From Selaginella moellendorffii (lineage: Eukaryota > Plantae > Lycopodiophyta): a stretch of 64,000 nucleotides of DNA. Every line of letters begins with the position of its first letter. Positions within the stretch are counted from its first letter, which is position 1. The stretch is taken from assembly GCF_000143415.4 (NCBI RefSeq), contig NW_003314282.1, positions 97,700 through 161,699 of the forward strand, read 5' to 3'. Of this stretch, positions 20,651 to 48,549 are shown in pieces. The translations under genes and the position numbers were made by a program. The notes beneath the pieces were generated by a model, which made no database searches, was not told where the DNA came from, and was given only the letters and a program-made list of their open reading frames with translations.

Positions 20651-21549
20651 TGGGGTGTTAGTAACTCTAACTATTGTACATTAACCAATCTTTCCATATA
20701 TAGTAAGTGAGCATTCCATCTGACTGAATCAAGCTACCACAGCTTAAAACAAGACAACACCACATCATCCACAAAGCCACCACAATTTAAAACAAGATAA
20801 CACCACATTGACCCATGAAGCTACCATAGCTTCAAATGAAAATCCAACTCAAACAGCCTCCACAACAATCAAAGATGATCAATAGAACCTCCCGTCTCCA
20901 CCAAAGAATAGGCAGCTCCATGATCATATTTCAATACTTACATTGCTCAAGGGAAAGAAACCACACCCCACCAACTCACCCGAGATCCCCTATACATGAT
21001 AACTGCGATGACATCATGAACCCTAAAGTTTCAATCTTGACAAGCTTTCTTGCTCTCTTCTAGCTTGATCCTATGCTAGGTGGAACTTGCCCCACAAGCA
21101 TTAAAGGAGAGTAAGGAATAGGTCTAGTTCTGCTCTTCCACTAGTTGCAATGTTGACCATTAAACATTTGTTGTGTTGTCCCTGGACCGCCAATTGCTAC
21201 AGTATACACTGTAGGAATTGCAACTTGTTAACATCAACATAGGAGGAAAAAAAACAATTTTTCACGTATATAAATATTCAAGAGTCTCATTGTTGTTGTG
21301 CATCCCTTCCTTCTTCTTCTTTCTGATACTATGGCACAATCTACTGTCTCTATTGACAGTGCAAAGCTGCAAGATGAAGGCGCTAGTGAGTGATAGCTTT
21401 TGAACTTGCTGAATAAGCTCATAATTTCGTTTGTGCATCTAGATGGGGCTAAAAGGTCCGTTTCATTCATTCATTTATACATGGTCTCGCAACACCATGA
21501 GATCGTTTGGATTGTTTTTATTCATGCATAGATATGTTTCTGTATTGCA

Positions 21550-22147
21550 GGAGGGTCTATTACAGAAGGGACTACAAAGGACAAGAAGGACATCCAGCAT
21601 GTGCTGGATTATTGGCACGATGATATTCTAGATGACACCAATCTTCCACAGGTATATAAGGATTTCCTATATTACATTGTTGCCATTGTTATTCTATCAG
21701 AGAACTCTACTTGGTCCGTTCAAGAAAAAAGATGGCTTCTACAAGGATGGATGGAGGCTTGACAGTCAAAGTAATGGGCCCTTTGTGAAGTTCCCTAACG
21801 AAGATCCTGATACTAAGTACCAGAATTTTGCCGTCCAATGGCAAAAGTCGTGTGTGGTTGCTCCGCTCGGCCAAAACCCCCGACCTGCGAACGCTCTTAT
21901 CATAGAAGCGTATAATAATAGCCAGAAGGAGTTAAAGGTGGCTGTTATCTGGAAACACTTGGGAGATAGTGATGGAAAAGTAATCTCCCATGTTTGTACT
22001 ATATTATTATGCTTGCTGTCTTTCATTTGCAACTCTCTGCTTTGCCAGCTTTTCGACTCCATAGCCACCAAGAATCTTCTGCACTCTTGGCTGCGACAAG
22101 GAGACTCCAACCGTGATGAGCTTGATGGGAGACGGAGGATGATATAA
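21550..22147 (+). pseudogene. Unknown intron-containing gene or fragment; paralogous broken copy at ~30030-30590
   Basis: AG/GT-bounded exons translate in frame (GSITEGTTKDKKDIQHVLDYWHDD.../RTLLGPFKKKDGFYKDGWRLDSQSNGPFVKFP...). No recognised family. Confidence 0.4.
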
Positions 22148-22248
22148 CTTTTCTCTCAGTTCTAGCTTGCTCCAATCGATCGAGAGCACACTGCATGATC
22201 GATGTGCAATAGCCATGATGAAGAGAATGCCATATCGAGCCACTCCAA

Positions 22249-23380
22249 TCACCTGGAACACGCTGCTGGTGACCTTATAACTCCTGGCCAGAGACCATGA
22301 AAGCTGCCCAGTGTCTCACGTCGTAAATCCGGCTTACCATCGTTGGCCTCGATCATCTCCACAACAGCCTCCCTGAGAGCTCTCGCTATGTCCATTCCTT
22401 GGACCAGATTTCTGTATAATTTCTCCATGAGCACCTGAGTGGACTTGTCTTTCACGTCCCAGGGTGATATCAAGCTGTGACTCAAAAGGCTTGACGATAA
22501 CATGGTAGTAATCCCTGAGAGCCTTGCCTGCATTGTTAGCATCCAGGAGCTCCAGTAATGCTGACGGTGAACAAGCGTTGAAGTCGCATTCTCGGTTATG
22601 CCCGACGAGCTCTCTATTGTGCAACAGGTAGAGGTGAGATATGACCAAAATGTCTCTGTCGATTCCAACGTCTTTGAAAATGACTTGGACTTGCCCCCAT
22701 GCTTTCTCGTCGTTCATGTCGAACTCGTCATGCTTCTCGCGGTCACCTTCGGTTGTGGCCAAGAACAGCACGTCCCTTGCATGACCCTCTCAAACCAAAA
22801 ACTTGCCCGCTTGAACTCGTTCAAAGCGCATAGGGAACTCTGATCAAAGTTGTACTTCATGGTTTTTAAGTTCGTGATCCTGTGCTCAAGTAGCCAAAGT
22901 TTGAATTTACCCGCAAGCAACACCTGAGCACAAAAAGTGATCAAAACAGGGAAAAAAACCAAAACAGAAGTCATCAACCTGAGCATCTCTTCGTACTTTC
23001 GGACGGAGTCAACTTCGAAGCCCATCTTCCACAGAAAATAACCATGGTGTCAAATGTGTGGCCGAACGAAGCCAGGTTGGTACGTCGAGGGTAAGTACAC
23101 TCTGCTAGTTGAATCGACTCTGCCATAAATTCGTTCATCAGAAGAAGGGTGGCTCTCCCGATGGCAATAATATGTCATAATATGCCCACGATAAGTCAGC
23201 CATCTTCATCCCACACTGCCGATCGAAAGTTTGCAAAGCAGGTAGCTCAGAGCCAAAGTCTGCAGCAGCTGACAAATTTGTGATTCCTGTTCCTCAGGAT
23301 CCTCTTCTTTTCGAAGCTTATCCAGGCTGTTGCCTATTTCTTCTACTTCCGCACTTAGCTTGGTGTCACTCCTTGCCATC
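22249..23380 (-). pseudogene. Pseudogene of the CHAT protease half-gene (copy of 30698-32689)
   Basis: High similarity to 30698-32689 with frameshifts. A large deletion joins FESQL directly to the VISLW/VKDKSTQ region, removing the catalytic His and Cys. Confidence 0.85.
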
Positions 23381-23643
23381 CAGCGTGATCTCAAAGCTCA
23401 GTGCACTCACAAAGACGCGGCAAACGAAGAGTCCTTCACCGAATCGGTCATGTCAAACCATTTTGAGGAGAAAAGCAAATTTCTCACTTGCTTAGAAGCT
23501 CCATGTTCCAGGAAGACTTTTGTTTCGTCTTGAAATATATGTGTACGCACCGGAGATCGTGAAGTTGTCGGTGCTCTTGCTATTTGACCATCGTAAGTCC
23601 AGGAACTCCTTTTCCTGCAGACCTGCTGTAAGCATTTGAAGGA

Positions 23644-25153
23644 AATGGGAAGTCTTCGGCCTCTTACTTGGCAGGCGCTGTCCGTTTGCTGGACGCATTG
23701 TTCAAGAGCAAGCAGGATCTCAAGCCTGCCGCGAGGAGATTTGCGGAATGCCACTGGATCTGTCTGCGGGAGAGAGATGTGGATGGACTTCAATGGAGTA
23801 TCAGATTCCTCCAAGGCATCATCAACCATTTCACGGAGAAAGAGTTGGAGCCGGATAATCTGTTTGCCTTTCTGCTGGAATACTGCTGACAAAGATGAAG
23901 CTAAGCAGCACCAGGAGTCGGAGTCTCCACGAGCACTGGAAGAGTTTCATGTGGCAAGTCGTCATCTTAGTGCCACTTGGTTCATCTCCTGCCTCGCTCA
24001 GATCTACTAAGGTATACCATGCTGGGATGGGACTCGGATCGGTGATGAAACAGCAAGAGCGAGATGGTGGAGACTGCTGCGACGCTCTGAAGTGGTTCCA
24101 AGTTGGTAAGTTCATTGCCGAAAGCCTGGAGCCGGCATCCATAGAATACAAGGCTTTTGCTTCATACCAGATCGCGAAGACTTTGGTGCAGCTTGGCGAG
24201 ACAGAAGACTGGAAGCGTCTGCCGCAGGATCTGTGCTCTCAGCAGCACTGCTTGAATGGTCAGCGCAATAATCAAGCATAAAGAAGGCGAACCTCGAGAG
24301 GAAATTGTCGCTGCATACGCGGCTGCTAGAAGAAAGCTTGTAAAGCTGATGGTGAATGTCAAACTTAAGCTTGACGAGAAGCTAGGATCGAGGTGTTGCT
24401 CCCAACGGTGCATCTTGAACTACACCAGGTTCGCACGGTTTTATATGCATGCTCACATTGCCAAAAGAACCTGGTATACTCAAGGCCGCTTGGTTGCTTA
24501 TGATCTGTACCGAGAAGGAAGACTGGAGATTAGTAAAGCTCCATGCTGCAAGGTCCCATGCTGAAGAGAACGCCACCCACGCTCACCAGAATCCAGATCG
24601 CTGTGAAGATGGATTATATGGACAGTCTCTGGGCGGCCGGGACGTTCCTCGACGAGTATATCGGCCGAGAAACGAAGGTAACACGCCAGGAATGAACTCT
24701 CGCATGGTTGCGTGCTTCCGGAAGCACTCCAGAGACGCTAAGGACCAAGAGGCGTGGACGAAATACTACGTGGGAAGGGTGGGATCAACGGACGGTAAAG
24801 TCTCGGATGAGCTGAGTTCCCCTGAGAGAGCAACAACGCCTCTGTTAAGCTACTTTGCGGTATGCGTCTACGAAGCAAAGACCATTCGTGAGTACCTGGA
24901 GAGATCCAAGAAGTTCTAGAGGTGAAAAACATAAGCCTTTAGTGCACCAAAAACTCAGACAGGCCGCGGCCGAGTACATGGAAGGGTCTCTCAGGTGGGG
25001 AGAATTTCCCAGCAAGACAACCTGCATTTCGAGAGAGCAATCCATCTCTTGAGACACCTTATCCTTTTTCGCCATGGCGCAGGAGAGCTTATGCACTATG
25101 GAAGATTGTCTGTGTACCTTATCTCCGGCCATCATGCGTAGGATTTGCAGCTA
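23644..25153 (+). pseudogene. Pseudogene of the helical N-terminal half-gene (copy of 32967-34784)
   Basis: Colinear fragments (CHWICLRERDVDGLQWSIR, WFQVGKFIAESLEPA, WTKYYVGRVGS) with many small deletions and frameshifts. Confidence 0.85.
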
Positions 25154-25744
25154 GTGGTGGACAAACACCATCACAAATAATTAACCTGCAAAGAACATTC
25201 TGGATGGAAGTTACCAACTTTTTAGAAAGCTCCGACCATCAATCCAATATCTGAGCGATAAATTGTGTTAGTGGTCAACAAAAAATTAGAAAAGAAAAGA
25301 TACAGACCTGAGGACATCTTACGCCTTGAACAGCAAACAACCAAAACCCCCGAATTCCTCGCGAGACATGCAACAAAAAAGAACTTACGAGAAGCGGCCT
25401 GGAATGGATATAGTGGTCGGTCCCCTGCCAGAGATGGTAAGTGAAGAAAATCCTCCTCTCTACAGAAATTCTTCTGCTCGGAAACTACCATGTACTTGGT
25501 CAATTTCAATGACTTTGATCGTCTAAAAATATATTAATAACAATCCTAGGGTTGTGACCTTTTGGGCAATCAATATGAGAAAATACAAGAGAAGCAATGG
25601 GTAAGAATTGAGTGGAGTGATTCTTTTAAGACATTTGTCCAGTTAGGAGACACAACCATTCAAAACTTTCAAAATTGAATGGTGACTGACAAAGATGAGG
25701 AGCAAAAAAGCTCTAATCCCTAGGTAGTGGTTCTCTATACCTGG

Positions 25745-26330
25745 TGGTGTTGGAGTTTTTGCTCCACAAACTGCACTTCCCACCTTCAAAGACGTGGAAG
25801 TGACTCAGAGTCCCTGCAAATGATATGTCTCTGCTCGATCACTAAGATAACAGCAGTTGCTTGGTGGTATCATCACAAACTCTCAAGTTCTTTACAATCT
25901 GAATGACTGCACCTGGAGCGGTATTGATGAGTGCACAAGTATGGCTAGCCTCTCTCTGTGCTCGCACAAAGCCTCCTCTTTCTACCAGTTTGGGATGTTG
26001 CAAGAAGTACTACTTAGCTGAGCAATCTAGCCTCCTTCATTTGTGCCAGTAGTTGCTTGATTCCCACAGCTTCGTGTTGCGCATGTGACCAATCTACTGT
26101 TCTGAACCTGTGTACCACACCATGATGATCTGTCCAGCAGCTCCACCAGGCTCCTTCCAAGGCTCACAAGCTGCTTCATGGACAAGATTTTGGCTTGCTC
26201 TTCCCATATACCGACTCTTCCGTATTATACTTGCCATGGTGAGATAAGTGGATGGTAGAGATCAGTCAGGATCACTGACGTGGCATTAACTTGGAACACA
26301 GGCCTGGGAGCCTGTCAAAAGTGGGAAAAT
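25745..26330 (-). pseudogene. PPR E/DYW-domain pseudogene fragment (copy of the 3' end of 35236-37934)
   Basis: Matches 35240-35850 (CEHRERLAI, IVKNLRVCDD, FHVFEGGKCS) with stops and deletions. Confidence 0.8.
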
Positions 26331-27249
26331 GTGGAGTTTGGGAGGCTGGCATTCAATACAAGCTATATAACGATGTAATCGACACACTATGAAGTTAACT
26401 GTGCTGAGACTGCACAAGAGCCACTACATTGGGCACCCACTCCATAAGGGCGTTAAATGCCATAACCGCTCTTCAGAGTGCTTGTGCTTGTCTACGTTTC
26501 CAGTGAACTGCACCCCAAGTCTACCTTTCATATCCCTCTAGATGATCACAGTGTCCACTTGGCCATAGTTGAACTGGATCGAAATGTACATATACCTTTC
26601 ACCCGTGAGCAGTTCATGCAAAGGAATGTTGGTTGGAATGCTGCAAAACGACTAGGGTACCTTGTTAACAATAAAGTTGTCCGAGATTCGCATGCCATGT
26701 CTAGATATCACATCGTCGCACAACTGCTCACATAGCTGATTACTGTGCTCTTCCAGGGAAGAACTCCAAGCCTTTCAAAACACCTCTACGTAAATCTACT
26801 CCACGAAAGGTGAGCAGAACTCGTCTTCTGACCGTGAGAACCTGGAATTGATCATTTCCTCTAGCAGGTGGAAGTTGCAAGTTATATCCTGCTTCAGCCT
26901 ATGAACAAACTTTTCCGCCAAATTTCGGATGAAAGACATTGTATGTCCAATAATGAAGCTCTCAACTGTCTTAACTAAAGAAATGTACAAGATAACCTAA
27001 AAGTCTAAAAATTTATTTCCATACATGAGCATTTAGCATTGTGAACACAGAAAGATTGGGTGTAGGACTATGTTGATCAGAAAGAGTTCTGCCCGTGACA
27101 AAGGAGTGTCACAATGAGGAAGAAGAGAAACGTGTGTGACTAGATTGTGGTTTGAGATTGGTGTTTTTTTTGTGGTATGCAAGGCATTCAAACACATTTG
27201 ACTTTGTTCAAGTTTGCTATTCACAACCCTGATAGGTATATGGGATGGA

Positions 27250-28314: not shown

Positions 28315-29010
28315 ATGAGACCTCAAAGCTTGCTGATGTAGGTCGTGACAGAGTCTTTTATGTCCATGCGCATGTTCAGAAATTTCTGGGTAAGGGTCAC
28401 TTTAGCATTCTCAGCCTTGGCCGAGAAAACAGCGAGACGAGCATCCCAGTTTGCTGCGATTGCCACTCTCTCATGTAAGTTGAAGTGCGAGGTCCATAGG
28501 TTTAGGATATCACGATACCTCTGTTCCATCCACGATACCCCAGCAGTCCTTAGCAAGGAGAATGAGTTGGACTTTGGCTCACCATGTCGCGAAGTTTGTT
28601 CCCGTGAGTTTGTTAAGCATCTTCTCCCAACCGTCTCAGTTTTCAGGAGATGAGCCTAGATTTGCAGGAGGTGGGGTATTAGAGGAAGACCCAGCCATTG
28701 TTAGAATCTAGAAGAAATTTAGTAACGAGGTGGTGGTGAAAACTGGTCTTTCCTAGGGGCAGGTCCTAGAGTAGCGGGGCAATGCTGCATCTCATCCTGC
28801 CTCTTGCGCTCCTGGATCCGGTGTGCTCTCGCAAGTGTTGCGAGTGCTTGTGTCGTTTCCTCCTCATCTCCCAGTGGTCGTCTGCACCAGTTGGGATTGG
28901 CCATTGGATCGTTTTCAACCTGATACCATGTAAGAATTTTTGATGCTGCAGCAGCTGTAGCTATTCTTGGACTTTGTGTTTGTGTGTTGTACATTGAGTT
29001 CAACTTCGAC
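28315..29010 (-). mobile_element. Ty1/copia 5' remnant (LTR end, PBS, gag)
   Basis: Minus strand ...CTTACA then TGGTATCAG (initiator-Met PBS) at ~28920-28928. gag N-terminus LNKLTGTNFATW*AKVQLILLAKDCWGIVDG and LTQKFLNMRM..DSVTTYISKL. Confidence 0.7.
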
Positions 29011-30697
29011 ACCCCGTTGCATGTTGTTGGCTTTGATGATGCGCTGCTTGGCAAAACAAATGACAAGGTGATCCAGATTCTCAAGACCATGACTCAGTGT
29101 TGAGGAAGTCTTTGCTACTACTCCTGGTGTACCGTCGCTTGCTCCTGTGCCTGAAGTTGGTCAAAGTAGAGGTGGTGCGCCTTCACAGCTGAACCATATG
29201 AGGCACTTGAATCTGGATGTCTATGGCATGCATGCTAAGCTTGATGTTCATTTCTTCAAACGGAAGGAGGAATCATGAAGGATGATCAAATTAATGTAGA
29301 GGAGCGGGTAGATAGTGATTTTTAGTCTTTTTTCTTCCTGAACAATATATAATCAATGCCTTTTTCTTCTGCCTATTGCTTTCACGTCTGCTTTTTCTAT
29401 GTTGAGCCTTAAAATGGCTTATGTGATAGCAAGATAAAGAAATTTCTCCGCGCAGTGCTTCACGCAACTCCTCCTGCTTCGCGTCTTGTGGAACGATCCC
29501 CATTCAGAGACATTTTACCTAGCTACCATTCTGTGCATGAGAACCTATTTTTCTATTCAGATAGATAAGTAGACACTGCCTCTTCGCAATTAAAGCTAGA
29601 TTTGCAAGCCAGTGCCCAGAGCGAAATTAACTGAACTTTGTAATCTTCTCCCCGTCTAAACAGTGACAAGAATTGTGCCTCAGTTCCTGCATCCTTAGAG
29701 CTCGCGCACGCGCCACCGAATAAACATTGGACCACCTCGAGGCGCGAAAGCCTGCAACAACCAGATCGCTCAAATTCCTTTTTATGCATGCCATTAATAA
29801 GGCTGATTGCTTGTTGAAAAATGTGGCTTTAGAGCAAGTATTTGGGCTAAAAGGTCCGTTCATTCATTAACTGTTTATAGGCACCACGAGGACAGAGGGA
29901 GAGAAAGTCACTTCACTTAATCTTTGGGCGAGGAAGCTTTTCTGCATGTCCATTATGCAGGCATGGTCTCGCAACGCGGAAACATTCGTTTGGATTGTTT
30001 TTATTCATACTTAGATATGTTTCTGTATTGCAGTTAGGGACTACCAAGGATAAAAGAGACATCCAGCATGTGCTGGGGCATTGGCACGATGATCTTCTTG
30101 ATGATACCATTAAATAGGTACTCTATGTGACTTTCCTATGATCACAATTGATGTCATTGTTATATCGGAGAACTCTATTTGTCCATTCATGACAAAAAAT
30201 GGCTTCATGGAGGCTTGAAAGTCAAAGTAATGGGCCCTTTGTGAAGTTTCTATGATAAGAGCGTGCGCAAGTCGGGGGTTTTGGCACAAAGCGGAGCAAC
30301 CACACATGAATAGACTGACTTTTGCCACTGGATGGCAAAATTCTGGTACTTGGTGTTGGTATCTTCTTCTTTTGAGAACAGAGCATGGCGGAGTTAAAGG
30401 TTGCAGTTATCAAGAGAAACACTTGGGAGATAGTGATGGAAAAGTAATCTCCCATGCTAATTATTTGATATTATGCTTGCTCTGGCCAACTTTTCGACTC
30501 CATAACTACCAAGAATCTCCTGCGCTCTTGGCTTCAAAAAGGAGACTCCAATCGTGATGAGCTTGATGGGAGACGGAGGACGATATAACTTCCCTCTCAG
30601 TTCTAGCTTGCTCCGATCGATCGAGAGCATTACCACTCACTGCATGATCGATGTGCAATAGCCATGGTGAAGAGAATGCCGTATCGAGCCACTCCAA

Positions 30698-32689
30698 TCA
30701 CGTGTTCCAGGAACACGCTGCTGGCGACCTTGTAACTCCTGGTAGTGTCGTGAAGGGACTCCCCGAGACGATGAAAGCTGCCCAGTGGCTCACGTCGTAA
30801 AGCTTCTGGCTACCATCGTTGGCCTCGATCATCTCCACGACAGCCTCCCTGAGAGCACTCGCAATATCCATTCCTTGGACCAGATTCCAGTATATCTTCT
30901 TCATGAGCACCTGAGTGGACTTGTCTTTCACGTTCCAGAGTGATATCACCACGGACGGAACTCCAGATATGTGAAACGACCTTGGCAGCGCCAGGATTCC
31001 TTCGGCAAACACTCTCCCAACTCCTGAGCTGCAGGCACTGAGAACCGCCGCTGATGCTCGGAACGGACTTTCACCTGCAAGCTCTACGACTTCGTCCCCT
31101 GTAAGCCTGTGCGAGTTCGACACTGTTGTGAGAGCTCTCGTGAGGCACTCCTCAAACTCCACAGATCTGTCGAGGCGAGCTGACTTTGCAAGGTCGTCTT
31201 GATGCTCTTCTGGCACTGCCAAAATCAGAGCTCCATCTGGAAAGTCCGTGCTAACTGTGCCGTGGCTCGCGATGTGAATCCAGTCACTCTCGGGAAGCTG
31301 CCGCAGCACAAATTCCTTTGTTGCATCATCTTCTCGGACCAAGTTGACGACACTGTGCGCGTTGGCACTCTTTAGAAGGGATCCCACCATCTCTGCCTCC
31401 TCGGTGGCATAGTATAGATCTCTGGTGGGGTTCCCTACGATCAGCGAACGAGATTGCCGTTGCTGCTGCTGCTGCTGCAGGACCTGTCTTCTCTTGTCGC
31501 AATGCTTCAAGAGTCTTAACGAGGAAACAGTCGCTAGAGCATACCTCTCGATCAAGTATTTGTCGTCCTCATCGATCATGGCACCAAATGGCACAAAGGA
31601 AACATCCTGTAATCGCGGGTTTTCACAGTTTGCAAGCAAAAGAACAAGAAACTAGTGCTCACCTCATTTGGAACTATAACCAGTGTCTTCGGTTGAATGC
31701 TTTCCAGTTGTGACTCAAAAGGCTTGACAATAATATGGTAGTAATCCCTGAGAGCCTTGTCTGCATTGTTAGCTTGCAGGAGCTCCAATAACGCCGACGG
31801 TGAACAAGCCTTGAAGTCCCATTCTCGGTTATGCCCGACGAGCTCGCCATTGTGCAACAGGTAGGAAGCCACTCCGTAGGATATCACCCTGCCGTCGCTT
31901 ACAGATAATCCACCGATGTGAGATATGACCAAGATGACTGTGTCAATTCCGACGTCTTTGGAAATGACTTCGACTTGCCCCCATGCTTTCTCGTCGTCCA
32001 TGTCGAACTCGTCGAGCTTCTCGTGGTCACCTTCGGTCGTGGCCAAGAACAGCATGTCCCTTGCATGACCCCTCTCAAACCAGAGCAATGCCCGCTTGAA
32101 ATCGCTCAAAGCGCATAGGGAACTCTGGACCTGATCGAAGTTGTACTTGATGGACTCTAAGTTTGTGATCCTTCCTGTGCTCAAGTAGCCAAAGTTTGAA
32201 TTCACTCGCAGCCAACACCTGACCCAAAACAATGATCAAAACAGGGAAGAAAAACGATACAAAAGTGACCAACCTGATCATCTCTTCGTACTTTCGGACG
32301 GATTCAACGTCGAAGCCCATCTTCCACAGCAGATAACCATGGTGCCAAAGACGTAGAGGGACGATGGTACGTCGAAGGTAAGTACACTCTGCTAGTCGAA
32401 TCGACTCTGCCATAAATTCGTTCACCAGCAGAAGGGGGGGATCTCCCGATGGCAATCTGTCATAGTATGCCCACGATAAGTCAGCCATCTTCATCCACAC
32501 TTCAGATCGAAAAATTTGCAAAGCAGGTAGCTCATGATCTCTGTCCAGGGCCAAAGTCTGCAGCAGCTGACAAATTTGTGATTCCTGTTCCTCAGGATCC
32601 TCTTCTTTTCGAAGCTTATCCAGGCTGTTGCCTATTTCTTCTACTTCCGCACTTAGCTTATCATGGAGCCTGATGCCACTCCTTGCCAT
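30698..32689 (-). CDS. CHAT-domain (caspase-like, clan CD) protease, C-terminal half-gene, 3 exons
   Basis: ATG 32689 (MARSGIRLHD), introns 32219-32273 and ~31608-31663. LVIVP..VPFGAM, LIVGNP, WIHIASHG (His), AVLSACSSG (Cys), VVISLWNVKD, HWAAF. No stops seen. Confidence 0.88.
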
Positions 32690-32966
32690 CCAGCGTGATC
32701 TCAAAGCTCAGTGCACTCACAAAGCCGCGGCGAACGAGAAGTCCTGCAGTCATGTCAAACCATTTTGAGGAGAAAAGCAAATTCCTCACTTGCTTAGAAG
32801 CTCCATGTTCCAGGGAAGACTTTTGTTTCGTCTTGAAATATATTGTGGGCTTGAAACGCGCACCGGAGATCGTGAAGTTGTCGGTGCTCTTGCTATTTGA
32901 CCATCATATCGCTTCAAAGTCCAGGAACTCCTTTTCCTGCAGAACAGCTGTAAGCATTTGAAAGAA

Positions 32967-34784
32967 ATGGAGAAGTGTTCGGCCTCTTACTTGGCAGGCG
33001 CTGTCCGTTTGCTGGACGAATTGTTCGAGAGCAAGCAGGATCTCAAGCCTGCCGCAAAGAGCTTTGCGGAATGCCATTGGATCTGTCTGCGGGAGAGAGA
33101 TGTTGATGGACTTCAATGGAGTATCAGACTCCTCCAAGGCATCATCAACCATTTCACGGAGAAAGAGTTGGAGCCGGATAATCTGTATGCGTTTCTGCTG
33201 GAATGCTTTGAAAGCACTGCTGACAAAGATGAAGGTAAGCAGCACCAGGAGTCGGAGTCTCCACGAGCACTGGCAGAGTTTCATGTGGCAAGTCGTCATC
33301 TTAGTGCCACTTGGTTCATCTCTTGCCTCGACATTGCGACTTCCGATCTACTAAGGTACCATGCTGGGATGGGACTCGGATCGGTGATTCAACAGCAAGA
33401 GCGAAATGGTGAAGACTGCCGCGACGCTCTGAAATGGTTCCAAGTTAGTAAGTTCATTGCCGAAAGCCTGGAGCCGGCATACATAGAATACAAGGCTTTT
33501 GCTTCATACCAGATCGCGAAGACTTTGGTGCAGCTTGGCGAGATAGAAGACGCTCAAACTCTCTGCCTGGAAGTGTCTACCGAAGAATCTGTGCTCTCAG
33601 CAGCTCTGCTTGACATGGTCAACGCAATAATCAAGCATAAAGAAGGCGAACCTCGAGAGGAAGTTGTCGCTGCATACGCGGCTGCTAGAAGAAAGCTTGT
33701 AAAGCTGATGGTGAATGTCAAACTTAAGCTTGACGAGAAGCTAGGATCGAGGTGCTGCTCCCAACGGTGTATCTTGAACTACACTAGATATCGGAGGTTC
33801 GCACAGTTTTACATGCTCATGCTGCCAAAAGAAGAGAAAGTACCTGGTATACCACTCAAGGCCTGCTTGGTTGCTTATGATCTGTACCGAGAAGCAAGAC
33901 TGGAGATAGTCAAGCTCCAAGAAGGCTGGAGCGATGCTGAAGATGCCAGGTCCTACGTTGAAGAAGGAATCGAGGTCATGTACCAGGACGCCGCCCATGT
34001 TTCTGTCACCGCCATTGACTCTCTAGTGCTCGCTCACCAGATCGCTGTGAAGATGGATGATATGGACAGTCTCTGGGCGGCCGGGACGTTCCTCGACGAG
34101 TATATCGGCCGAGAAACGAAAGGTGACACGCCAGGAATGATCTCTCGCATGGTTGCGTGCTTCCGGAAGCACTCCAGAGACGATGAGGACCAAGAGGCGT
34201 GGACGAAATACTACGTGGGAAGAGTGGGATCAACGGACGGTAAAGTCTCGGATGAGCAGTACGAGTTCCTGAAGGAGTCCCTGGAAAGAGCAACAACACC
34301 CCTGTTAAGCTACTTTGTGGCATATGCACTGGCCAATGCGTCATACGAAGCAAGGACCATTCACGAGTACCTGGAGAGATCCAAGAAGTGTGCCCTCCAA
34401 ACCGGAAAGGAGGAGCTTATAATAAACGCGATGATGGAGCAGTTCAATTCACTCCGAGAGAACCAGATGTTCCAAAAGGCGCACGAAATCCAAACAGAGA
34501 TGAAAAAAATAAGCCGCGCTTTTGCGTACCAAAAACTCGGACAGGCCGCGGCAGAGTACATGGAAGGGTCTCTCAGGATAGCCTGGGGAGAATTCCCCAG
34601 AAAGACATCCCTGCATTTCGAGAGAGCAATCAATCTCTTGGAGTCCCTGGAGACACCATATCCTTTTTCGCTCAAGGCCTACCTCGAGAGCAGCCACGGT
34701 GCGGGAGAGCTTACGTACTATGGAAGATCGTCCGTGTACCTTATCTCCGGTAATGCTTCCATCATGCGTAGCATTTGCAGCTAG
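32967..34784 (+). CDS. Alpha-helical (TPR-like) protein equal to the N-terminal half of the fused CHAT genes, intronless, 605 aa
   Basis: Uninterrupted ORF homologous along its length to residues 1-~590 of 44784-48549 and 56826-60623. Own stop codon. Confidence 0.82.
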   Translation: MEKCSASYLAGAVRLLDELFESKQDLKPAAKSFAECHWICLRERDVDGLQWSIRLLQGIINHFTEKELEPDNLYAFLLECFESTADKDEGKQHQESESPRALAEFHVASRHLSATWFISCLDIATSDLLRYHAGMGLGSVIQQQERNGEDCRDALKWFQVSKFIAESLEPAYIEYKAFASYQIAKTLVQLGEIEDAQTLCLEVSTEESVLSAALLDMVNAIIKHKEGEPREEVVAAYAAARRKLVKLMVNVKLKLDEKLGSRCCSQRCILNYTRYRRFAQFYMLMLPKEEKVPGIPLKACLVAYDLYREARLEIVKLQEGWSDAEDARSYVEEGIEVMYQDAAHVSVTAIDSLVLAHQIAVKMDDMDSLWAAGTFLDEYIGRETKGDTPGMISRMVACFRKHSRDDEDQEAWTKYYVGRVGSTDGKVSDEQYEFLKESLERATTPLLSYFVAYALANASYEARTIHEYLERSKKCALQTGKEELIINAMMEQFNSLRENQMFQKAHEIQTEMKKISRAFAYQKLGQAAAEYMEGSLRIAWGEFPRKTSLHFERAINLLESLETPYPFSLKAYLESSHGAGELTYYGRSSVYLISGNASIMRSICS

Positions 34785-35235
34785 TGGAGTGGACGAACGC
34801 CATCACCTGCAAAGAACCATAAGCTACGCTCTGGATTGAACTTAACAACTTTTTGGAAAGCTGAGCGATAAACTGTGAACAAAAATTAGAAAATAAAAGA
34901 TACAAACAGCTTACGCCTTGAAATCCATCTTCCACAGCAAAAAATCCTCGCAACTGAAGCCTCCAATCGACACATTATTACCAAGGAGCCATGCAACCAA
35001 AAAAAACTTACGAGAACTTGCGGACTCTTCATGAAGAAGGAAATTGTTCCCCTTAGTTTTCCCTGGGAAACTTTCTAGCTTTACCATGTACTTGGTCTTG
35101 CAAACCTCAATTTCAATGCCTGCCATGGATCCAAAAGTGAGAAACTAAAAGCCAGAGACGTCACAAAATACCTTGGAAAGCGATGGCTTTGATCGCCACC
35201 TCCTCGTATTACTCCACGGACGTAGATAACAAGGA

Positions 35236-37934
35236 TCACCAAAAGTCCCCACAACTGCACTTCCCACCTTCAAAGACGTGGAAGCGACTCGAGTCCCTGC
35301 AGATGATACGTCTCCGCTCGATCGCCGAGATAACAGCAGTCGCTTGGTGGCAGTCGTCACAAACTCTCAAGTTCTTTACGATCCGAATGACTGCACCTGG
35401 AGCGGTATTGATGAGTGCACAAGCAATGGCTAGCCTCTCGCTGTGCTCGCACAAAGCCTCCTCTTTCTGACAGTCCGAGACGTTACAGGAAATACTGCTT
35501 AGCTGGGCAACATAGCCTCCTTCCTTCATTCGAACCAGTAGTTGCTTGAGCTTGATTCCAACAGCTTCACTTTGAGCGTGCGAGCAATCTCCAGCTCTGA
35601 ACCTGTGTACCACACCATGATGATCCGTCCAGCAGCTCACACCAGGCTCCTTCCAAGGCCTCGCGAGCCGCTTCATGGACAAGATTTTGGCTTGCTCTTC
35701 CCACATACCAACGCTTCCGTAGATGCTTGCCATGGTGAGATAAGTGGACGCTTGCTTCTCGTTGAGCTCCACCAGTGTATTGAATGCCAGCCTCCCAAGC
35801 TCCACATTTTTCCACTTCCGACAGGCTCCCAGGACAGCGTTCCAAGTTACCACGTTCGGCTTATAAGGCATGGACTTCACCAGCAGTACTGCTTCGTCAA
35901 GATAATTTGCCCGGCCTAGAAGATCGACCATGCAGTCGTAGTGCTGAGCTAAAGGCTTGGTCTCCTGTGAAGAGAGGATCTCCTGGAAGTACCTCTTTCC
36001 TCGTTCTACAAGACCAGCGTGACTGCAAGCAGTGAGAAGTGCGAGGAAGGTGATACCATCTGCGCGGTGTCCTTCGTTCTTGAGCATTTCAAACAGTGAA
36101 AATACCATGTCGGTCTTACCGCGACGACTGTAGCCACACATCAACGCACTCCAAGTCACCAAGTTCCTGCTGCTGCTACTGATGGACTCGAACACTCGAT
36201 GAGCACTGGCCATGCTAGCGCACCTCGAGTAGAAATCCACCAAGCAATTGGCAACGTAAGTGTCTGTCTCGAGTCCAAGCCGAAGGACTTCGCCATGAAC
36301 TACTTTCCCAAGCTCAAGTGCCACCAGACTCCCACATGCTATCAAAGCCGCTACGAAAGCTCGGGAGTCGCTTGCCTCGCAGCCGTCTTGAGCTCTCATT
36401 CTCGAGAATATGTCGAGGGCCACCTCGGCATCACCATTCTCGGCGTAGCCCAGGATCAATGCATTCCAGGACACAGGACTGTGATACTGCATCCTGTCAA
36501 ACACCATGCGAGCGTCCAGAAGGCTTCCACACTTTGCATAGACGTCCACCAGACTAGTCGCCACGAATACGTTGTCCAGGAAGCCGTCCCTGGCAGCTTG
36601 GCAGTGAAGAGGAAATGCCTTTTCCAAGCTCGTGACCTTCACCAGCTTTCCATCAACCTGTGTCACATTCTCGTCTCGGTCCGCACAATCCCCGCATGCT
36701 CTCAGCACAGAAACGTAAGTCCGAGCGTCGGGATAACACCCTTGAGCTTGCATCTGCCGAAAGAGTTCTAGACCGAGTTCGCCTTCCCCGCTTTCCCCGT
36801 ATCCCAGTATCAGTGATGTCCAGGACACTACATCCCGAGTTTCCATCCTGTAGAAAGCCAAGATCGCGTCTACCATGCTCCCACACTTCGCGTAGAGGTT
36901 GATAATACTGCTCGCAACATAAACTTGTTTGTCCTGTCCAGCTCGTACAGCCTGAGAGTGGATCGCCATAGCTTGCTCCATTCCCTTGAGCTTGACCAAC
37001 TTCCCATCGACTTTAACACCGTCTTCTTTTGAAACCAAGCTGGTGCAAGCTGTAAGAGCAGCAACAAGTGTCCGAGAGTCCGGTAGACAATGCTGGTGCT
37101 GCTGGACCATCCACCAGAATAGTTCCAATCCCAGTTCCTCCTCTCCGTTCTCAACATATCCAGCTATCAATGCGTTCCAAGACACCACAGTGTGCTGCGG
37201 AGCCCGATCAAAAACCATCCTTGCGTCGACCAAGCTTCCACACTTGGCATACATGCTGATGAGTGTATTCGCCAGCGAAACAATGGATTCGTCGTAACCA
37301 GCTTGGAGAGCACGGGAGTGAAGTGCCATTCCCGTTTCCAAGAACTGGAGCTTGTCTTGGTTGAGCTGGTGACCGTCGTCCGAAGCAGCCGTAGCCAAGT
37401 TCGCGCAAGCAACCAGCGCCGCAACAAAGCTCAAAGCATCTGGAGCAGCAATTCTCGTGAAAACCTCCAAAGCCACAGCATTCTTCCCAATTTCCACATA
37501 CCCAAGAACTAGCGCTGTCCACGAGACGACGTTCTGACAAGGCATCCGGTCGAAGACGGCACAGGCATCGATCATGCTCCTGCATTTGGCGAACATATCC
37601 ACCAGGCTGGTCGCCAAGTAGATGTTCGATCCATCACACGCCTGTGTGTGGATTTTCCTGGCGATCTCGAGATCTCTGGAGCAGCTGCACGCCTTAGATG
37701 CGACCAGCAGCTCCGGAATCCCAGGTGCGTTCTGCAATGCGTGATTATCCCCATCCCTAGCGGCCTCATTGCCGGAGTACTTGAGGAACGATCTCAGCCT
37801 CGAGAGAGCGTACCACTGGACAGAAAAGCGACAGATCAAGAGCGCAGAGCACAGATTTCACTCACATCGTATCGCTGGATCCAAAATTCCGCCCCGAATC
37901 GCGTTGCTGTCGCCGAGCATTTCAGCCAAACCAT
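35236..37934 (-). CDS. PLS-class PPR protein with E and DYW deaminase domain (organellar RNA-editing factor)
   Basis: Repeated VVSW.ALI.GY.ENG and L..MYAKCGS motifs, PG box KEPGVSCW, HSERLA and CDDCH zinc ligands, ends CSCGDFW. Probable short first exon (ATG 37934, intron ~37818-37865). Confidence 0.93.
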
Positions 37935-44783: not shown

Positions 44784-47700
44784 ATGGAGGGGACTTGTTG
44801 TTCGTCTTGCTTGAAACGAGCTGTTCTTGTGCTGAAAGAGTTGTTTGAGAGCAAGCAAGATCTCAAGGCTGCTGTCAAGAGCTTTGTTGACTGCCATTTC
44901 ATCTGTTTGAAACAGGGAGATGCCGATGGATTTCTGTGGAGTACCAAGCTCCTCCAAGGCGTCATCGGTCACTTTTCAGAAAAGGATTTGGAGCCCGAGA
45001 GCCTCTCGGTATTTCTGCTGGAGTGCTTTGCAAACGACCAGCAGCAGGAAGAAGAAGATCCACAGGCACTGTCAGCGTTTCATGTGGCAACACTCCATCG
45101 AGACAAAGCTCTGTTCGACTCCTGCCTCGATTCCGCAAGATCAGATTTTCTGAGGTATCATGCTGCCATGGGCCTTGGATTGATCATTCAGCAGGATGGT
45201 GGAGAAGGCGCTCTAAAATGCTTCCAAGTTGCCAAGTCCATAGCAGAAGGTCTGGATGTAGAGTACAGGGCCATAGCTTCGTACTGGATGATGAAGACTC
45301 TGGCACAGCTTCAAGAAGCGAATATTGCTCTAGATCAGGTGTTCACTGGATCGGTAATCTCGTCAGCTCTGGTTACCATGGTAAAAGCGAAGATCAAGCA
45401 GAAGGAAGGCCAAGCTGGGAAAGAGGTGGTCTCCGTGTATGCTGAGGCTAGAAGAACACTGGCAAACTTCATGGTGAATCTCAACGATAAGCTTGCGGAA
45501 AAGTTGGAGTCGTCCTGCTGCTCTACCTTGTTCCTCCTCGAGTTTATTCGCTATGACAACTTTACCAAGTTCTCCATGTTGATGCTGCCATCTCGGCCAG
45601 ATCCAGAGGCACTCCCTACACCATTGAATGTATGCTTCGCTGCATATGATTTCTACAGAGAAGCGAGACTGGAGATACTAAAGCTCCAAGAAAACTGGAA
45701 CGACGCCAAAGATGCAAGGGCCCATATCGAAGAAGGATATGACACTGGTCTCGACTCTCTCGTACTTGGCCATGAAATCGCGTTGAAGATGGATGACTTA
45801 GACAGCATTTACTGGGCCGGAGTGTTTCTGGACAACTATATCAACCGCGAGATCACAGCAGACACTCAAGCTATGGTTTCTCGACTGATAGCATGTTTCG
45901 AGAAATACGAGAACGAAGACAACAAGGCTTGGGCATATTACTACGTTGGAAGAAAGGGAACAATCGATGGCAGATTTTCCAGAACACAGTATGAACTTCT
46001 GGAGAAGTCCCTGGAACAGGCAAAGACAGGAATGCTGCGTTACTTTGCTGCGTATACGCTAGGCCATGCATGCAGTGACAAGAAATCAAGGCAGGAGTAC
46101 CTGGAGAGCGCAAAACACTGCGCTCTCCAAACCGGCAACGAAGAGCTCATAATCGACGTCATGCTCGAGCTGTTCGTTCTTCTCATAGAGCGCCAGATGT
46201 TCCAAAATGCAAGTGAGCTTTGCCAGGAGCTTGAGAAGATGATCAACAGCAGCCATTTCTCCAGCGTGGTCTTTGGTCAAGGTGTTGTGGCGCTCATGGA
46301 AGGGCATCTCAAGGTTGCTTGGGGAGATCATTCCGGCAGCTTCCTACATTTCCAACGAGCTGTCCACCTTTTGGAACCTCTACAAACTCTATACCCGGCG
46401 GCACTGGTCACGTATATGTGCGGCGAGAACAAACGCACAGTGTCTTACTTTGGCAGGGCATGTTTGCAACGCAGCTTCAGCAGCGCTACCACCGCGATCG
46501 AAAATTTTGTGAAAAACTCGTCGAAAGGTATGCGTGTTTTTTTTTCTTTTCTTCTTCTGCTTTCTTACCATTCTTTCCTACAGGAATTCCTCATTTGGGA
46601 ATTGAGCTCTACGATGAGGCACAGTTGGAGTTCGACGAGATTCTAGAGTCGTTAAAAGAGCTGGATAAGCTTGAAGAGGAAGGAGATCTCGAACAACAGG
46701 AATCACGGATCGCGCACTTGCTCCAAGCTCTGAAACGTGATCATAGGGAGGTCGAACTACATGGTAGACTGGAGGTTTTTGAAGCTAGAGTTTGGATGAA
46801 GATGGCTCACCTGGCACATGCATACTACGAGAGATTGTCTCAAGAGGACGATCAAATCGCGTCGCCTATTTCACTCGTAAACGAATTCATGACACAAGCA
46901 ACTCAGCTTGCAGAGGCCACGTTTCTGCGAGGTACTGCTGTTCCTCCGGTTCTTTGCTCCCATGGTTTTCTGCTGTGGAAGATGGGCTTCACCAGAGATG
47001 CTGTCCAAAAGTTGGAGCAAGCACTCAGGTTGGTATTGTTCATATTTTGTGTCTTTCCTCTCTTTCTAAATGTTGCATTCGTAGGCATTGGCTGCGAGTG
47101 GATGAAAACTTCGGGTATGTCAGCACGGGAAGGATCACTAATATAGAATCGATCAAAGTCTACTTCAAAGGAGTGCAGATGGTCCTTTTCGAAGCAAACG
47201 AATTCAAGCGAGCAATGATTTGGTCTGAGAGGAGCCATGCAAGAGACATGTTGTTTCTGGTCACCCGGGAAGGAGATCGCGAAAACTCGACAGAGTTTGA
47301 CATGGACGACGACAGAGCCTGGTTAGAAGTTGAAGAAATCTCCAAACTCATGGGAAAGGACACAGCCATTGTAGTCATATCACACCTTTCAACAGCAGCG
47401 TTTAGCTCGGTGGCTACGTATCTGTTGCATGATGGAGAGCTCGTCGATTTCAGAAAACGGTATGGTTTCCAAGTCTGCTCGCCATCAGATTTGCTGGAGC
47501 TCATGAAGGACAACGACGCAGACAGCGCTCTCAGGGACTACTACGACATTATCGTCAAGCCTCTCGAGTCTCGACTGGAAAGCATTCAGCCCAAGAGGCT
47601 CATATTTGTTCCAACCGAGGTAAACTTTCTTCTTTTCACTTGTATGGATCTCAAATTCATATGATCAATGCAGGATGTTTCCCTTGTTCCTTTCGGCGCC

Positions 47701-48549
47701 ATGATCGATGAAGACGACAACTACTTGATCCAGAGATATGCTGTAGCCACAGTTTCCTCGTTGAGGCTCTTGAACCATTGTGACAAGAGAAGACGGGCCC
47801 TACGGCAGCAGAAGCAGAAATCACAAACTTCGTCATCTCTGGTGGTTGGCAATCCCAGCAAAGATCTGTATTATGCAACGAAAGAAGCAGAGATGGTGGA
47901 GTCGTTTCTGAAGAGAGCCAACACAGGGAGCGTCGTCAACTTGCTGTGCGAAGCTGATGCAACGAAAGATCTTGTGCTGCAGCAGCTTCCTGAAAGTGAT
48001 TGGATTCACATCGCAAGCCACGGTACAGTTACCGCGGACTTTCCAGATGGAGCTCTGGTTTTGGCAGTGCCGGAAGAGCATCGAGACGACCTTGCAAAGT
48101 CAGCTCGATCTTCCGAGTTTGAGGAGTGCCTCGTGAGAGCTCTCACAACAGCGTCGGTTTCGGACAGGCTCACAGGGGATGAAGTCGTAGAGCTTGCAGG
48201 ACAGGGTCCGTTTCGAGCATCAGCCGCGGTTCTCAGCGCCTGCAACTCAGGAATCGGAAGAGTGTTTGCCGAGGGAATCCTGGCGCTGCCGAGATCGTTC
48301 CACATCTCCGGAGTTCCGTCCGTGGTGATATCACTTTGGAACGTGAAGGACGAGTCCACTCAGGTGCTCATGGAGAAGATGTATGGTAATCTGGTGGAAG
48401 AAGGGATGGACATTGGGAGTGCTCTCCAAAAGGCTGCTGTGGAGATGATCGAGGCTGACGATGGCTGCCAAAAGCTTTACGACGTGAGGCATTGGGCAGC
48501 TTTCTTCGTCTCGGGGAGTCCCTTCACAACTCTAGTATCAACAGTGTGA
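44784..48549 (+). CDS. Fused helical(TPR-like)-CHAT caspase-like protease, 4 exons
   Basis: ATG 44784, introns 46528-46583, ~47029-47084, ~47620-47673. Catalytic WIHIASHG and VLSACNSG, VVISLWNVKD, HWAAF. Frames join without stops. Confidence 0.88.

What the first reader, a model, noticed from the sequence alone, without database searches (positions are those of the whole stretch)
30698..34784. Clean gene fission: helical half and protease half encoded as two intact divergent genes
Seen: the + ORF (32967-34784) ends YYGRSSVYLISGNASIMRSICS*, aligning with FFGRNRLQMSFGDAVVLLKACN of the fused paralog at 56826. The - gene (ATG 32689) begins MARSGIRLHD, aligning with that paralog's MGAATGITLYD a few codons later. 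Almost nothing is lost or duplicated, both halves have their own start and stop, and they share a 277-bp divergent spacer. Both stay open despite heavy divergence from the fused copies, whereas their recent duplicate at 22-25 kb has decayed. Inference: a selected two-component sensor/inhibitor plus protease pair on a bidirectional promoter.
Basis: partly seen in the sequence, partly recalled or inferred. Interest (0 to 1): 0.8.

Follow-up and report, generated by a model that had tools for sequence, protein, structure and literature searches.

The report
Protease gene split by an inversion
In the spikemoss Selaginella moellendorffii, a small inversion cut one copy of a caspase-like (TPR-CHAT) protease gene into two head-to-head genes; both are still transcribed, correctly spliced and kept intact by selection, so this is a real gene fission, but whether the two proteins still work together is untested.

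Summary
The window is Selaginella moellendorffii scaffold GL377586.1. It holds a tandem family of about 1,200-aa helical-repeat + CHAT protease genes.

- **The split.** In one copy, the first ~590 residues are a single + strand ORF (A, 32967-34784). The rest is a three-exon - strand gene (B, ATG 32689, stop 30698). The two start codons lie 277 bp apart, and only about 4-6 codons are missing at the junction.
- **Transcription.** Stranded RNA-seq shows both genes transcribed from opposite strands. Both B introns are spliced, both haplotype alleles are expressed, and no re-joined RNA was seen.
- **Assembly.** The second haplotype has the same arrangement with intact ORFs, so this is not a mis-assembly.
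- **Selection.** The split predates a segmental duplication. That duplicate (21.5-26.4 kb) has 39 indels and about four times more amino-acid changes; the focal pair has no disrupting indel. Haplotype pN/pS is 0.28 for A (p=0.008) and 0.55 for B (not significant).
- **Architecture.** B alone has a Csx29-like short-TPR + CHAT fold with its His/Cys dyad. A is a lineage-specific TPR-like solenoid.

A single inversion placing the promoter region between the halves is the best explanation. The sensor/inhibitor role of A is untested. The scan noted this fission before on another piece of the same genome (s1-328938), without RNA evidence.

The parts
32967..34784 (+). Gene A (SELMODRAFT_413529): single-exon ORF of 605 aa, equal to residues 1-589 of the fused paralogs. 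It is an all-helical, TPR-like solenoid.
   Evidence: ORF and alignment. Transcribed from the + strand at about 28x in X23. Public protein P0001 is 99% identical. No Pfam family. Helical model of the homologous part of F, with TPR-solenoid fold matches.
32690..32966 (.). 277-bp spacer between the two start codons; the putative shared bidirectional promoter.
   Evidence: B RNA coverage ends near 32754 and A coverage begins in 32932-32971. The spacer differs by 1.1% between haplotypes, against 3-5% in introns and flanks. It is 94% identical to the spacer of the decayed duplicate and has no other match in the window.
32274..32689 (-). Gene B exon 1 (ATG 32689). The start Met aligns with internal Met594 of paralog F.
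   Evidence: RNA coverage and splice joint.
32219..32273 (-). B intron 1 (55 nt, GT..AG), at the same position as in F and G.
   Evidence: Sequence. 28+8 spliced reads and 2 contigs.
31663..32218 (-). Gene B exon 2.
31607..31662 (-). B intron 2 (56 nt, GT..AG), at the same position as in F and G.
   Evidence: Sequence. 41+13 spliced reads and 2 contigs.
30698..31606 (-). Gene B exon 3 with stop codon. It holds the CHAT domain (about 30758-31597), catalytic His439 (31262-31264) and Cys516 (31031-31033).
   Evidence: Pfam CHAT E=3.3e-49. His and Cys invariant in a 40-sequence alignment. Residue positions. The three-exon model equals public protein P0005 (626 aa).
30454..30697 (-). B 3' UTR (extent taken from RNA coverage).
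   Evidence: Depth table.
21480..26360 (.). Decayed segmental duplicate of the whole head-to-head unit (C-half remnant 22255-23394 on -, N-half remnant 23638-25132 on +).
   Evidence: It has 33 deletions and 6 insertions relative to the focal CDS, 28 of them frame-disrupting, including a 658-nt loss in the CHAT exon.
56826..60623 (+). Fused paralog F (3 exons, intact), used as the reference for the unsplit state.
44784..48549 (+). Fused paralog G (4 exons, intact). Its extra 56-nt intron 46528-46583 lies exactly at the fission site.

Best explanation
One member of a Selaginella-specific tandem family of TPR-like/CHAT (caspase-fold) protease genes was cut by a single small inversion.

**How the split arose (inferred).** The ancestral gene lay on the - strand. 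The segment holding its first ~590 codons and its 5' flank was flipped. One breakpoint fell within about 4 codons upstream of an internal Met (F Met594), which now serves as B's start codon. The other breakpoint fell upstream of the gene. The N-terminal solenoid (A) and the rest (B) now lie head to head, with the former 5' region between them.

**What is shown.**
- The collinear, non-overlapping homology of A and B to the fused paralogs.
- Separate transcripts from opposite strands whose 5' edges are about 200 bp apart.
- Correct splicing of B.
- Expression of both alleles.
- The same layout in both haplotypes and in an older duplicate.
- Intact ORFs maintained since the split, while the duplicate decayed.

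**What is inferred.**
- The spacer acts as one bidirectional promoter.
- B is an autonomous Csx29-like short-TPR + CHAT cysteine protease with its His439/Cys516 dyad.
- A still binds B in trans as a detached N-terminal regulatory or substrate-recognition arm. This resembles the N- and C-terminal fragments of autocleaved separase, which stay associated (recalled from knowledge, not tested here).

I put about 0.85 on 'real fission, both halves expressed and selected', about 0.7 on the single-inversion route, and about 0.35 on the halves working as one complex.
For: - **Layout and homology.** A aligns to F residues 1-589 and B to 596-end, with no overlap and a gap of about 4-6 residues.
- **Gene structure.** Intron positions in B are conserved with F and G.
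- **Transcription (stranded RNA).** B is read from the - strand at about 54x (X23) and 15x (X24). A is read from the + strand at about 28x and 3.4x. There are 41+13 and 28+8 spliced reads at B's two introns. No loose ends join A to B. Heterozygous SNPs at 30-55% in both genes show both alleles are expressed.
- **Assembly.** Haplotype 2 (L002) has the same layout, with a 626-aa B and a 614-aa A ORF.
- **Timing.** The split predates the segmental duplication, because alignment is contiguous across the spacer at 94%.
- **ORF integrity.** All 39 CDS indels fall on the duplicate lineage and every deletion is polarised by F/G. The chance of this under equal rates is about 4e-12.
- **Amino-acid changes.** Polarised changes are 15 in the focal pair against 56 in the duplicate (p=1e-6).
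- **Haplotype comparison.** pN/pS is 0.28 for A (p=0.008) and 0.55 for B. CDS divergence is 1.1-1.9% against 3-5% in flanks and introns.
- **Paralog comparison.** Pairwise omega against F and G is 0.2-0.4.
- **Fold.** The B model has pTM 0.76, and its best fold matches are full-length Csx29 TPR-CHAT, then separase. His and Cys are invariant.
Against: - Nothing shows that A and B proteins interact, or even that either is translated.
- Lineage-specific omega is imprecise. It is about 0.25 if synonymous changes are split evenly between the two lineages, and about 0.6 using the few polarised synonymous changes (7 vs 16). The N:S contrast between lineages is not significant (Fisher p=0.40).
- B's haplotype pN/pS of 0.55 is not significantly below 1.
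- A's C-terminal 24 residues differ by a frameshift between alleles, so the junction-proximal tail is not constrained.
- Transcription start sites are inferred from coverage bins and contig ends, not mapped.
- The spacer has no detectable homology to the upstream regions of F or G, so its origin as the ancestral 5' region is not demonstrated.
- Co-expression rests on only two raw runs.
Confidence: 0.7

Rival explanations
1. The genes are the same, but the two products no longer work together. B is a self-sufficient TPR-CHAT protease. A has taken an independent role, for example as a free solenoid that titrates or regulates the fused paralogs F and G or their ligands, or some unrelated scaffold function.
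For: B alone matches full-length Csx29 and cyanobacterial TPR-CHAT proteins over 75-82% of its length, so it does not obviously lack anything. The A:B RNA ratio differs between runs, about 0.5 in X23 and about 0.2 in X24. A's junction-side tail is unconstrained.
Against: Head-to-head placement with a conserved 277-bp spacer (1.1% between haplotypes) and parallel rise and fall in the two raw runs fit co-regulation. In every intact paralog the A-like region is covalently attached to the B-like region.
Confidence: 0.3
2. The fission arose by an inverted duplication of the whole gene followed by complementary loss. The left copy lost its N-half and the right copy lost its C-half. This is the classical duplication-degeneration route, as opposed to one inversion.
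For: The cluster is rich in duplications, internal inversions and partial copies: fragment H, the L003 copy and the 21-26 kb duplicate. The spacer has no recognisable homology to the upstream regions of F or G.
Against: Two independent deletions would have to end within about 4 codons of each other, leaving neither overlap nor a real gap. No remnant of a lost N-half or C-half flanks either gene. dS to F/G is similar for A and for B exons 1-2, at about 0.9-1.6.
Confidence: 0.12
3. The pair is a transcribed but functionless remnant of a gene broken by inversion. Its ORFs are open only because too little time has passed.
For: Substitution-based omega after the split is imprecise, and B's haplotype pN/pS of 0.55 is not significant. 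The family shows birth-and-death turnover.
Against: The sister duplicate, of the same age, has 39 indels (28 frame-disrupting) and a stop codon, while the focal pair has no disrupting indel in 3.7 kb of CDS. A's pN/pS is 0.28 with p=0.008. Both splice sites of both introns are kept and used. The catalytic dyad is kept in both alleles.
Confidence: 0.06
4. The head-to-head arrangement is an assembly artefact.
For: None found. The window is an older Sanger-era assembly.
Against: The same arrangement occurs on two separately assembled haplotype scaffolds that differ by 1-5%, and in a duplicate that is about 8% diverged at aligned sites (85% by blastn). RNA reads cover the spacer and splice across 32935/32990 on the - strand, which links A's 5' end to the spacer.
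Confidence: 0.01

Closest known systems
TPR-CHAT proteases (Pfam CHAT PF12770; Csx29 of type III-E CRISPR 'Craspase'; cyanobacterial and metazoan TPR-CHAT proteins such as human TTC28 and the coral expansions in PMC12314368)
   Same: There are N-terminal TPR-like helical repeats followed by one C-terminal CHAT caspase-fold domain with a His/Cys dyad. B's model matches full-length Csx29 best, and its nearest relatives outside Selaginella are cyanobacterial TPR-CHAT proteins at 24-31% identity. Family growth is by tandem duplication, as in corals (PMC12314368).
   Different: Here the helical region is split between two genes. The ~590-aa N-terminal solenoid has no detectable relatives outside Selaginella-like sequences: only 7 hits among 1.84 billion representatives. 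No CRISPR or other known partner is present, and activity and substrate are unknown.
Separase (clan CD protease with a large N-terminal helical domain)
   Same: A large alpha-solenoid lies N-terminal to a caspase-fold protease. Separase is among the fold matches of both the solenoid and B. From general knowledge, not tested here: autocleaved separase fragments remain associated, which is a precedent for a non-covalent N-half/C-half enzyme.
   Different: There is no sequence relationship beyond the fold. In separase the split is post-translational, not genetic. No securin-like partner was identified.
Gene fission in eukaryotes (duplication-degeneration cases such as Drosophila monkey-king; insertional fission such as mitochondrial cox2, PMC5374615)
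   Same: A single ancestral ORF is now encoded as two separately expressed, complementary genes, both retained.
   Different: The most parsimonious route here is one intragenic inversion. It leaves the halves head to head around a shared 277-bp promoter region, with an existing internal Met reused as the start codon. Full-text searches found no described case of this combination.

Membership tests
CHAT-domain (clan CD, caspase-fold) protease | Significant match to the CHAT domain model | tested here: met
   B exon 3 matches PF12770 at E=3.3e-49, 168 bits against a cut-off of 24.
CHAT-domain (clan CD, caspase-fold) protease | Catalytic His and Cys present | tested here: met
   His439 (IASHG) and Cys516 (LSACSSG) are invariant columns in a 40-sequence alignment. 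Both are present in both alleles.
CHAT-domain (clan CD, caspase-fold) protease | Caspase-like alpha/beta fold | tested here: met
   The AF2 model of B has pTM 0.76. Foldseek matches are Csx29 at 3e-10, then separase, gingipain and SAVED-CHAT.
CHAT-domain (clan CD, caspase-fold) protease | Proteolytic activity | not testable with these tools
   Needs a biochemical assay.
TPR-CHAT architecture (helical repeats and CHAT on one polypeptide) | Helical repeat region N-terminal to CHAT in the same protein | tested here: met
   B residues 1-230 are helical. Cyanobacterial TPR-CHAT hits cover up to 82% of B. The larger solenoid A is on a separate polypeptide, unlike in paralogs F, G and P0004.
Gene fission (split gene pair) | The two genes match contiguous, non-overlapping parts of a fused homolog, and the fused state is ancestral | tested here: met
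   A matches F 1-589 and B matches F 596-end. Paralogs F, G, P0004 and P0007 and the bacterial relatives are all fused.
Gene fission (split gene pair) | Each part has its own transcript, start and stop, and no re-joined RNA exists | tested here: met
   Strand-specific coverage on opposite strands, with no loose ends or joints linking A and B. This holds within about 30-55x depth in one run.
Gene fission (split gene pair) | Both parts under purifying selection after the split | tested here: met
   Indels are 0 in the focal pair against 39 in the duplicate. Amino-acid changes are 15 against 56. pN/pS is 0.28 for A and 0.55 for B. The substitution-only branch omega is imprecise.
Bidirectional-promoter gene pair | Head-to-head genes with start sites less than 1 kb apart | tested here: met
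   The ATGs are 277 bp apart. Coverage edges are at about 32754 (B) and 32932-32971 (A).
Bidirectional-promoter gene pair | Co-regulated expression | tested here: inconclusive
   Both genes are higher in X23 than in X24 (B 54 vs 15, A 28 vs 3.4). Only two raw runs were available.
Two-component protease plus regulator (separase-securin or Craspase style) | Physical interaction, and control of the protease by the partner | not testable with these tools
   No complex prediction or experiment was available.

The most novel reading that the evidence does not exclude
A and B reassemble as a non-covalent TPR-CHAT holoenzyme. The detached, fast-evolving solenoid A acts as a dosage-tunable sensor or gatekeeper of the B protease. 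The pair would belong to a lycophyte immune-like or cell-death protease cluster that diversifies by duplication, inversion and gene conversion. It would be a natural 'split' version that reveals what the N-terminal solenoid of eukaryotic TPR-CHAT proteases does.
Probability: 0.25. Interest if true: 0.7.

Novelty: new variant of a known kind. Interest (0 to 1): 0.5.

Why it matters
Well-documented gene fissions in eukaryotes are rare. Here the route can be reconstructed: one inversion, an internal Met reused as a start codon, and the old 5' region now firing in both directions. An internal control is also present, because a same-age duplicate of the split pair decayed while the focal pair stayed intact.

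The case also offers a natural experiment for eukaryotic TPR-CHAT proteases, whose function is essentially unknown. The large N-terminal solenoid and the short-TPR + CHAT core can be expressed, knocked out and assayed separately, exactly as evolution has separated them.

Tried and rejected
- **Pfam on A and on B exons 1-2.** Nothing reached significance even at E up to 10; only faint TPR hits appeared.
- **Sequence search of solved structures with the CHAT exon.** Nothing was found, so fold comparison was used instead.
- **Bacterial promoter/terminator scan of the spacer.** This tool does not apply to a plant, and it gave no hits.
- **Homology of the spacer and of the sequence downstream of A to the upstream regions of F and G, or to the transposon-like sequence in L003.** None was found, so the ancestral-promoter origin of the spacer stays inferred.
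- **A possible 3' splice at 34806.** The loose ends there are allele differences: haplotype 2 has an 11-nt insertion at 34804.
- **The annotated 31-nt intron in SELMODRAFT_413529.** It has no read support.
- **Lineage-specific N:S contrast.** It is not significant because few synonymous changes can be polarised at dS above 1.
- **Literature searches.** Searches for CHAT domain + Selaginella, CHAT domain + gene fission, and gene fission + inversion + bidirectional promoter found nothing relevant.
- **Pfam on the ORF head-to-head with F (55448-56704).** No family even at E up to 10.
- **Spliced models.** They were searched exon by exon, by reference. For whole-length B I used the public protein P0005, which equals the three-exon model. 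Scripts walked codons across exon junctions by coordinate only to classify variants.
Full report
**Source and setting.** The window is identical to Selaginella moellendorffii assembly GCA_000143415.2, scaffold GL377586.1; locus L001 matches window 22967-44839 at 100%. It holds intronless DYW-type PPR genes and genes with GT..AG introns of about 55 nt. Along it lies a tandem family of genes that encode a long all-helical N-terminal region followed by a CHAT (caspase-fold) domain:
- fused copy F, 56826-60623, 3 exons;
- fused copy G, 44784-48549, 4 exons;
- a rearranged fragment H, 48751-50866;
- the focal locus;
- a decayed copy of the focal locus at 21.5-26.4 kb.

**Check of the observation.** The + ORF runs from 32958 (first ATG 32967) to 34784. 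It encodes 605 aa that align end to end with residues 1-589 of F and with exon 1 of G, at about 52% identity. On the - strand, ATG 32689 opens a gene whose product aligns from F residue 596 to the end. Between A's stop and B's start only about 4-6 residues of the fused sequence (F ..ENLQ..) are missing, and nothing is duplicated. A's TAG aligns with F's GAG590 codon, and B's ATG aligns with F's internal ATG594. The start codons are 277 bp apart.

Three corrections are needed.
- The - gene is three exons in three frames (32689-32274, 32218-31663, 31606-30698). Its introns of 55 and 56 nt sit at exactly the positions of the F and G introns.
- Pfam CHAT covers only the last exon (E=3.3e-49). B therefore keeps about 230 aa of helical repeats plus a beta-rich linker ahead of the protease. 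The cut lies inside the helical region, not at the domain boundary.

**Transcription.** I laid two stranded raw RNA-seq runs (X23, X24) and two contig sets (X1, X5) of the same species on 30100-35400.
- From 30454 to about 32754 all pairs have the first mate on +, meaning RNA from the - strand in the usual stranded protocol. Mean depth is about 54 in X23 and 15 in X24.
- From about 32932 to 34878 the orientation flips, with depth about 28 and 3.4.
- The orientation switch within the spacer is direct evidence for two divergent transcripts.
- Both B introns are spliced (41+13 and 28+8 reads) and are absent from the X1 and X5 contigs.
- No loose ends or joints connect A's 3' end to B, so there is no sign of a re-joined message at this depth.
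- About 40 single-base variants at 30-55% frequency show that both alleles of both genes are expressed.
- B's coverage edge (about 32754; contigs reach 32725/32743) and A's first coverage (bin 32932-33108; a contig starts at 32971) put the two 5' ends about 200 bp apart. This is what a bidirectional promoter would give. The start sites themselves are not mapped.

**Not an assembly artefact.** The second haplotype scaffold (GL377596.1, L002) has the same order: PPR-DYW gene, A, a 276-bp spacer, then B. It aligns continuously to 29000-37000. The diverged duplicate also has the head-to-head layout, with alignment running straight through the spacer at 94% identity.

**Selection after the split.** Because the duplicate shares the layout, the split is older than the duplication. 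The two copies are therefore same-age replicates.
- Relative to the focal CDS, the duplicate carries 33 deletions and 6 insertions. Twenty-eight of these disrupt the frame, one is a 658-nt loss in the CHAT exon, and there is also one stop codon.
- Every deletion removes residues that F and G possess, so all events lie on the duplicate's lineage. The focal pair has no frame-disrupting indel in 3.7 kb. Under equal neutral rates the chance of 39:0 is about 4e-12.
- Amino-acid changes that F/G can polarise number 15 on the focal lineage and 56 on the duplicate (7:29 for A, 8:27 for B; p=1e-6).
- If synonymous changes are shared equally between lineages, omega is about 0.25-0.27 for both A and B and about 0.8-1.1 for the duplicates. 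This is my arithmetic.
- With the few polarisable synonymous changes (7 vs 16), the focal estimate rises to about 0.6. The N:S contrast is then not significant, so the substitution-only estimate is imprecise.
- Between haplotypes, A has 9 non-synonymous and 9 synonymous differences (pN/pS 0.28, p=0.008). B has 15 and 8 (0.55, p=0.13).
- Haplotype CDS divergence is 1.1-1.9%, against 3-5% in introns, UTRs and flanks. The flanks also carry indels, whereas the CDS has only one.
- That one is a 1-nt deletion at 34711 in haplotype 2. It is seen in 9 of 26 and 3 of 7 reads and in an X1 contig. It replaces A's last 24 residues with an unrelated tail and gives a 614-aa ORF. A's functional core therefore ends near residue 581.
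- Pairwise omega against F and G is 0.2-0.4 in every exon.

**What the proteins are.**
- A has no Pfam family.
- A profile of the N-terminal region found only 7 proteins among 1.84 billion representatives. Five are S. moellendorffii annotations. The other two are P0005, which is B itself, and an unnamed distant 977-aa fused TPR-like + CHAT protein. This solenoid is therefore lineage-specific at the sequence level.
- An AF2 model of F exon 1 (pLDDT 66) is entirely helical and matches TPR solenoids such as Ski3, TTC7B, Ctr9 and the separase N-terminus. The fission site (residues 590-596) abuts a low-confidence stretch (594-603) between better-predicted blocks. This fits a flexible joint but does not prove one.
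- B equals the public protein SELMODRAFT_413528 / XP_002973293 (626 aa).
- B's nearest relatives outside Selaginella are cyanobacterial TPR-CHAT proteins at 24-31% identity. Some cover 75-82% of B.
- In a 40-sequence alignment, His439 and Cys516 are invariant.
- B's model (pTM 0.76) best matches full-length Csx29, the TPR-CHAT protease of Craspase, followed by separase, gingipains and SAVED-CHAT.
- B thus looks like a complete minimal TPR-CHAT unit, and A like an extra N-terminal arm.

**How it arose.** One inversion explains everything. I infer an ancestral - strand gene whose N-terminal ~590 codons and 5' flank were flipped.
- A single breakpoint produces both A's end and B's beginning, which is why nothing is lost or duplicated.
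- The former 5' region lands between the halves.
- An inverted whole-gene duplication followed by complementary deletions would need two deletions ending within about 4 codons of each other, and it leaves no remnants here. I rate that route much lower.
- dS to F/G is similar for A and for B exons 1-2, at about 0.9-1.6, as expected for one history.

The site seems to be a recurrent boundary in this family.
- G has a 56-nt phase-1 intron in the codon that aligns with B's start Met.
- A decayed copy about 23 kb beyond the window (L003) is 93% identical to F. It begins 5 nt upstream of the same Met, behind transposase-like sequence.
- Fragment H and the L003 copy each carry internal inversions, so the family is inversion-prone.

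**How it probably works.** The following is shown: two divergent, co-located transcripts, intact and constrained ORFs, and a preserved catalytic dyad. The following is inferred: the 277-bp spacer is a shared bidirectional promoter, B is an active protease, and A acts on B in trans. The spacer is as conserved between haplotypes as coding sequence, at 1.1%. The precedent of separase fragments staying associated after autocleavage is from my own knowledge and was not tested. Equally possible is that A now acts independently, for example on the fused paralogs. No result addresses the 'sensor/inhibitor' idea.

**Comparison with what is known.** TPR-CHAT is a recognised architecture in bacteria (Csx29) and in animals (TTC28; hundreds of tandem copies in corals, PMC12314368). 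Gene fission is a known process. Full-text searches found nothing on CHAT genes in Selaginella or on fission of a CHAT gene, and nothing combining fission, inversion and a shared promoter. Both genes are already annotated as separate hypothetical proteins.

**Verdict.** This is a real, cleanly reconstructed gene fission in which both halves are expressed and retained. It is a new variant of known kinds, and of moderate interest until an interaction between the halves is tested.

Noticed in passing
window 46528-46583: Paralog G has an extra 56-nt GT..AG intron (phase 1) in the codon that aligns with B's start Met and F Met594, which is exactly the fission site. Paralog F has no intron there.
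   Followed up: partly
L003 8400-10600 (same scaffold, about 23 kb beyond the window end): A decayed C-half-only copy (SELMODRAFT_413537, P0006) is 93% identical to F. Its homology starts 5 nt upstream of the same Met codon, behind Transposase_21-like sequence. It also has an internal inversion and has lost the catalytic Cys. This is a second rearrangement boundary at the same site.
   Followed up: partly
window 48751-50866: Fragment H of the family has N-half residues 1-342 on +, residues about 337-525 inverted on -, then a middle exon on +. This is another internal inversion in the cluster.
   Followed up: no
window 30698-31606 vs 47674-48546 and 59763-60620: Synonymous divergence is mosaic. 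For the CHAT exon, dS is 0.4-0.5 between B and F/G and only 0.08-0.095 between F and G. All other exons give about 0.4-1.6. This suggests gene conversion among CHAT exons, including across opposite orientations.
   Followed up: partly
window 32755-35171, - strand: A low-level spliced - strand RNA runs antisense through gene A into B's 5' end. Its CT..AC joints are at 32935/32990, 33428/33510, 33605/33652, 34953/35012 and 35118/35171. It may be read-through from the PPR-DYW gene or a distal alternative start of B.
   Followed up: no
window 34747-34777: The public model SELMODRAFT_413529 (613 aa) removes a 31-nt 'intron' to skip the stop codon. No RNA read supports that splice, and the unspliced ORF is 605 aa.
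   Followed up: yes
window 34711: A 1-nt deletion allele (haplotype 2, about one third of reads) replaces the last 24 residues of A and lengthens the ORF to 614 aa.
   Followed up: yes
window 55448-56704, - strand: An intact 418-aa ORF lies head to head with fused paralog F, 121 bp away. It has no Pfam family even at E up to 10 and no paralog in the window. Another note of the scan (s1-402783) reads it as pore-former-like.
   Followed up: partly
window 30207-30248, + strand: A 42-nt internal exon of a + strand gene lies just downstream of B. It is well expressed, with spliced loose ends on both sides. One flanking exon sequence matches 21721, inside the duplicated block.
   Followed up: no
window 14364-16589, - strand: There are retrotransposon reverse-transcriptase, RNase H and integrase ORFs between the duplicated blocks and the 2OG-oxygenase genes.
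   Followed up: no
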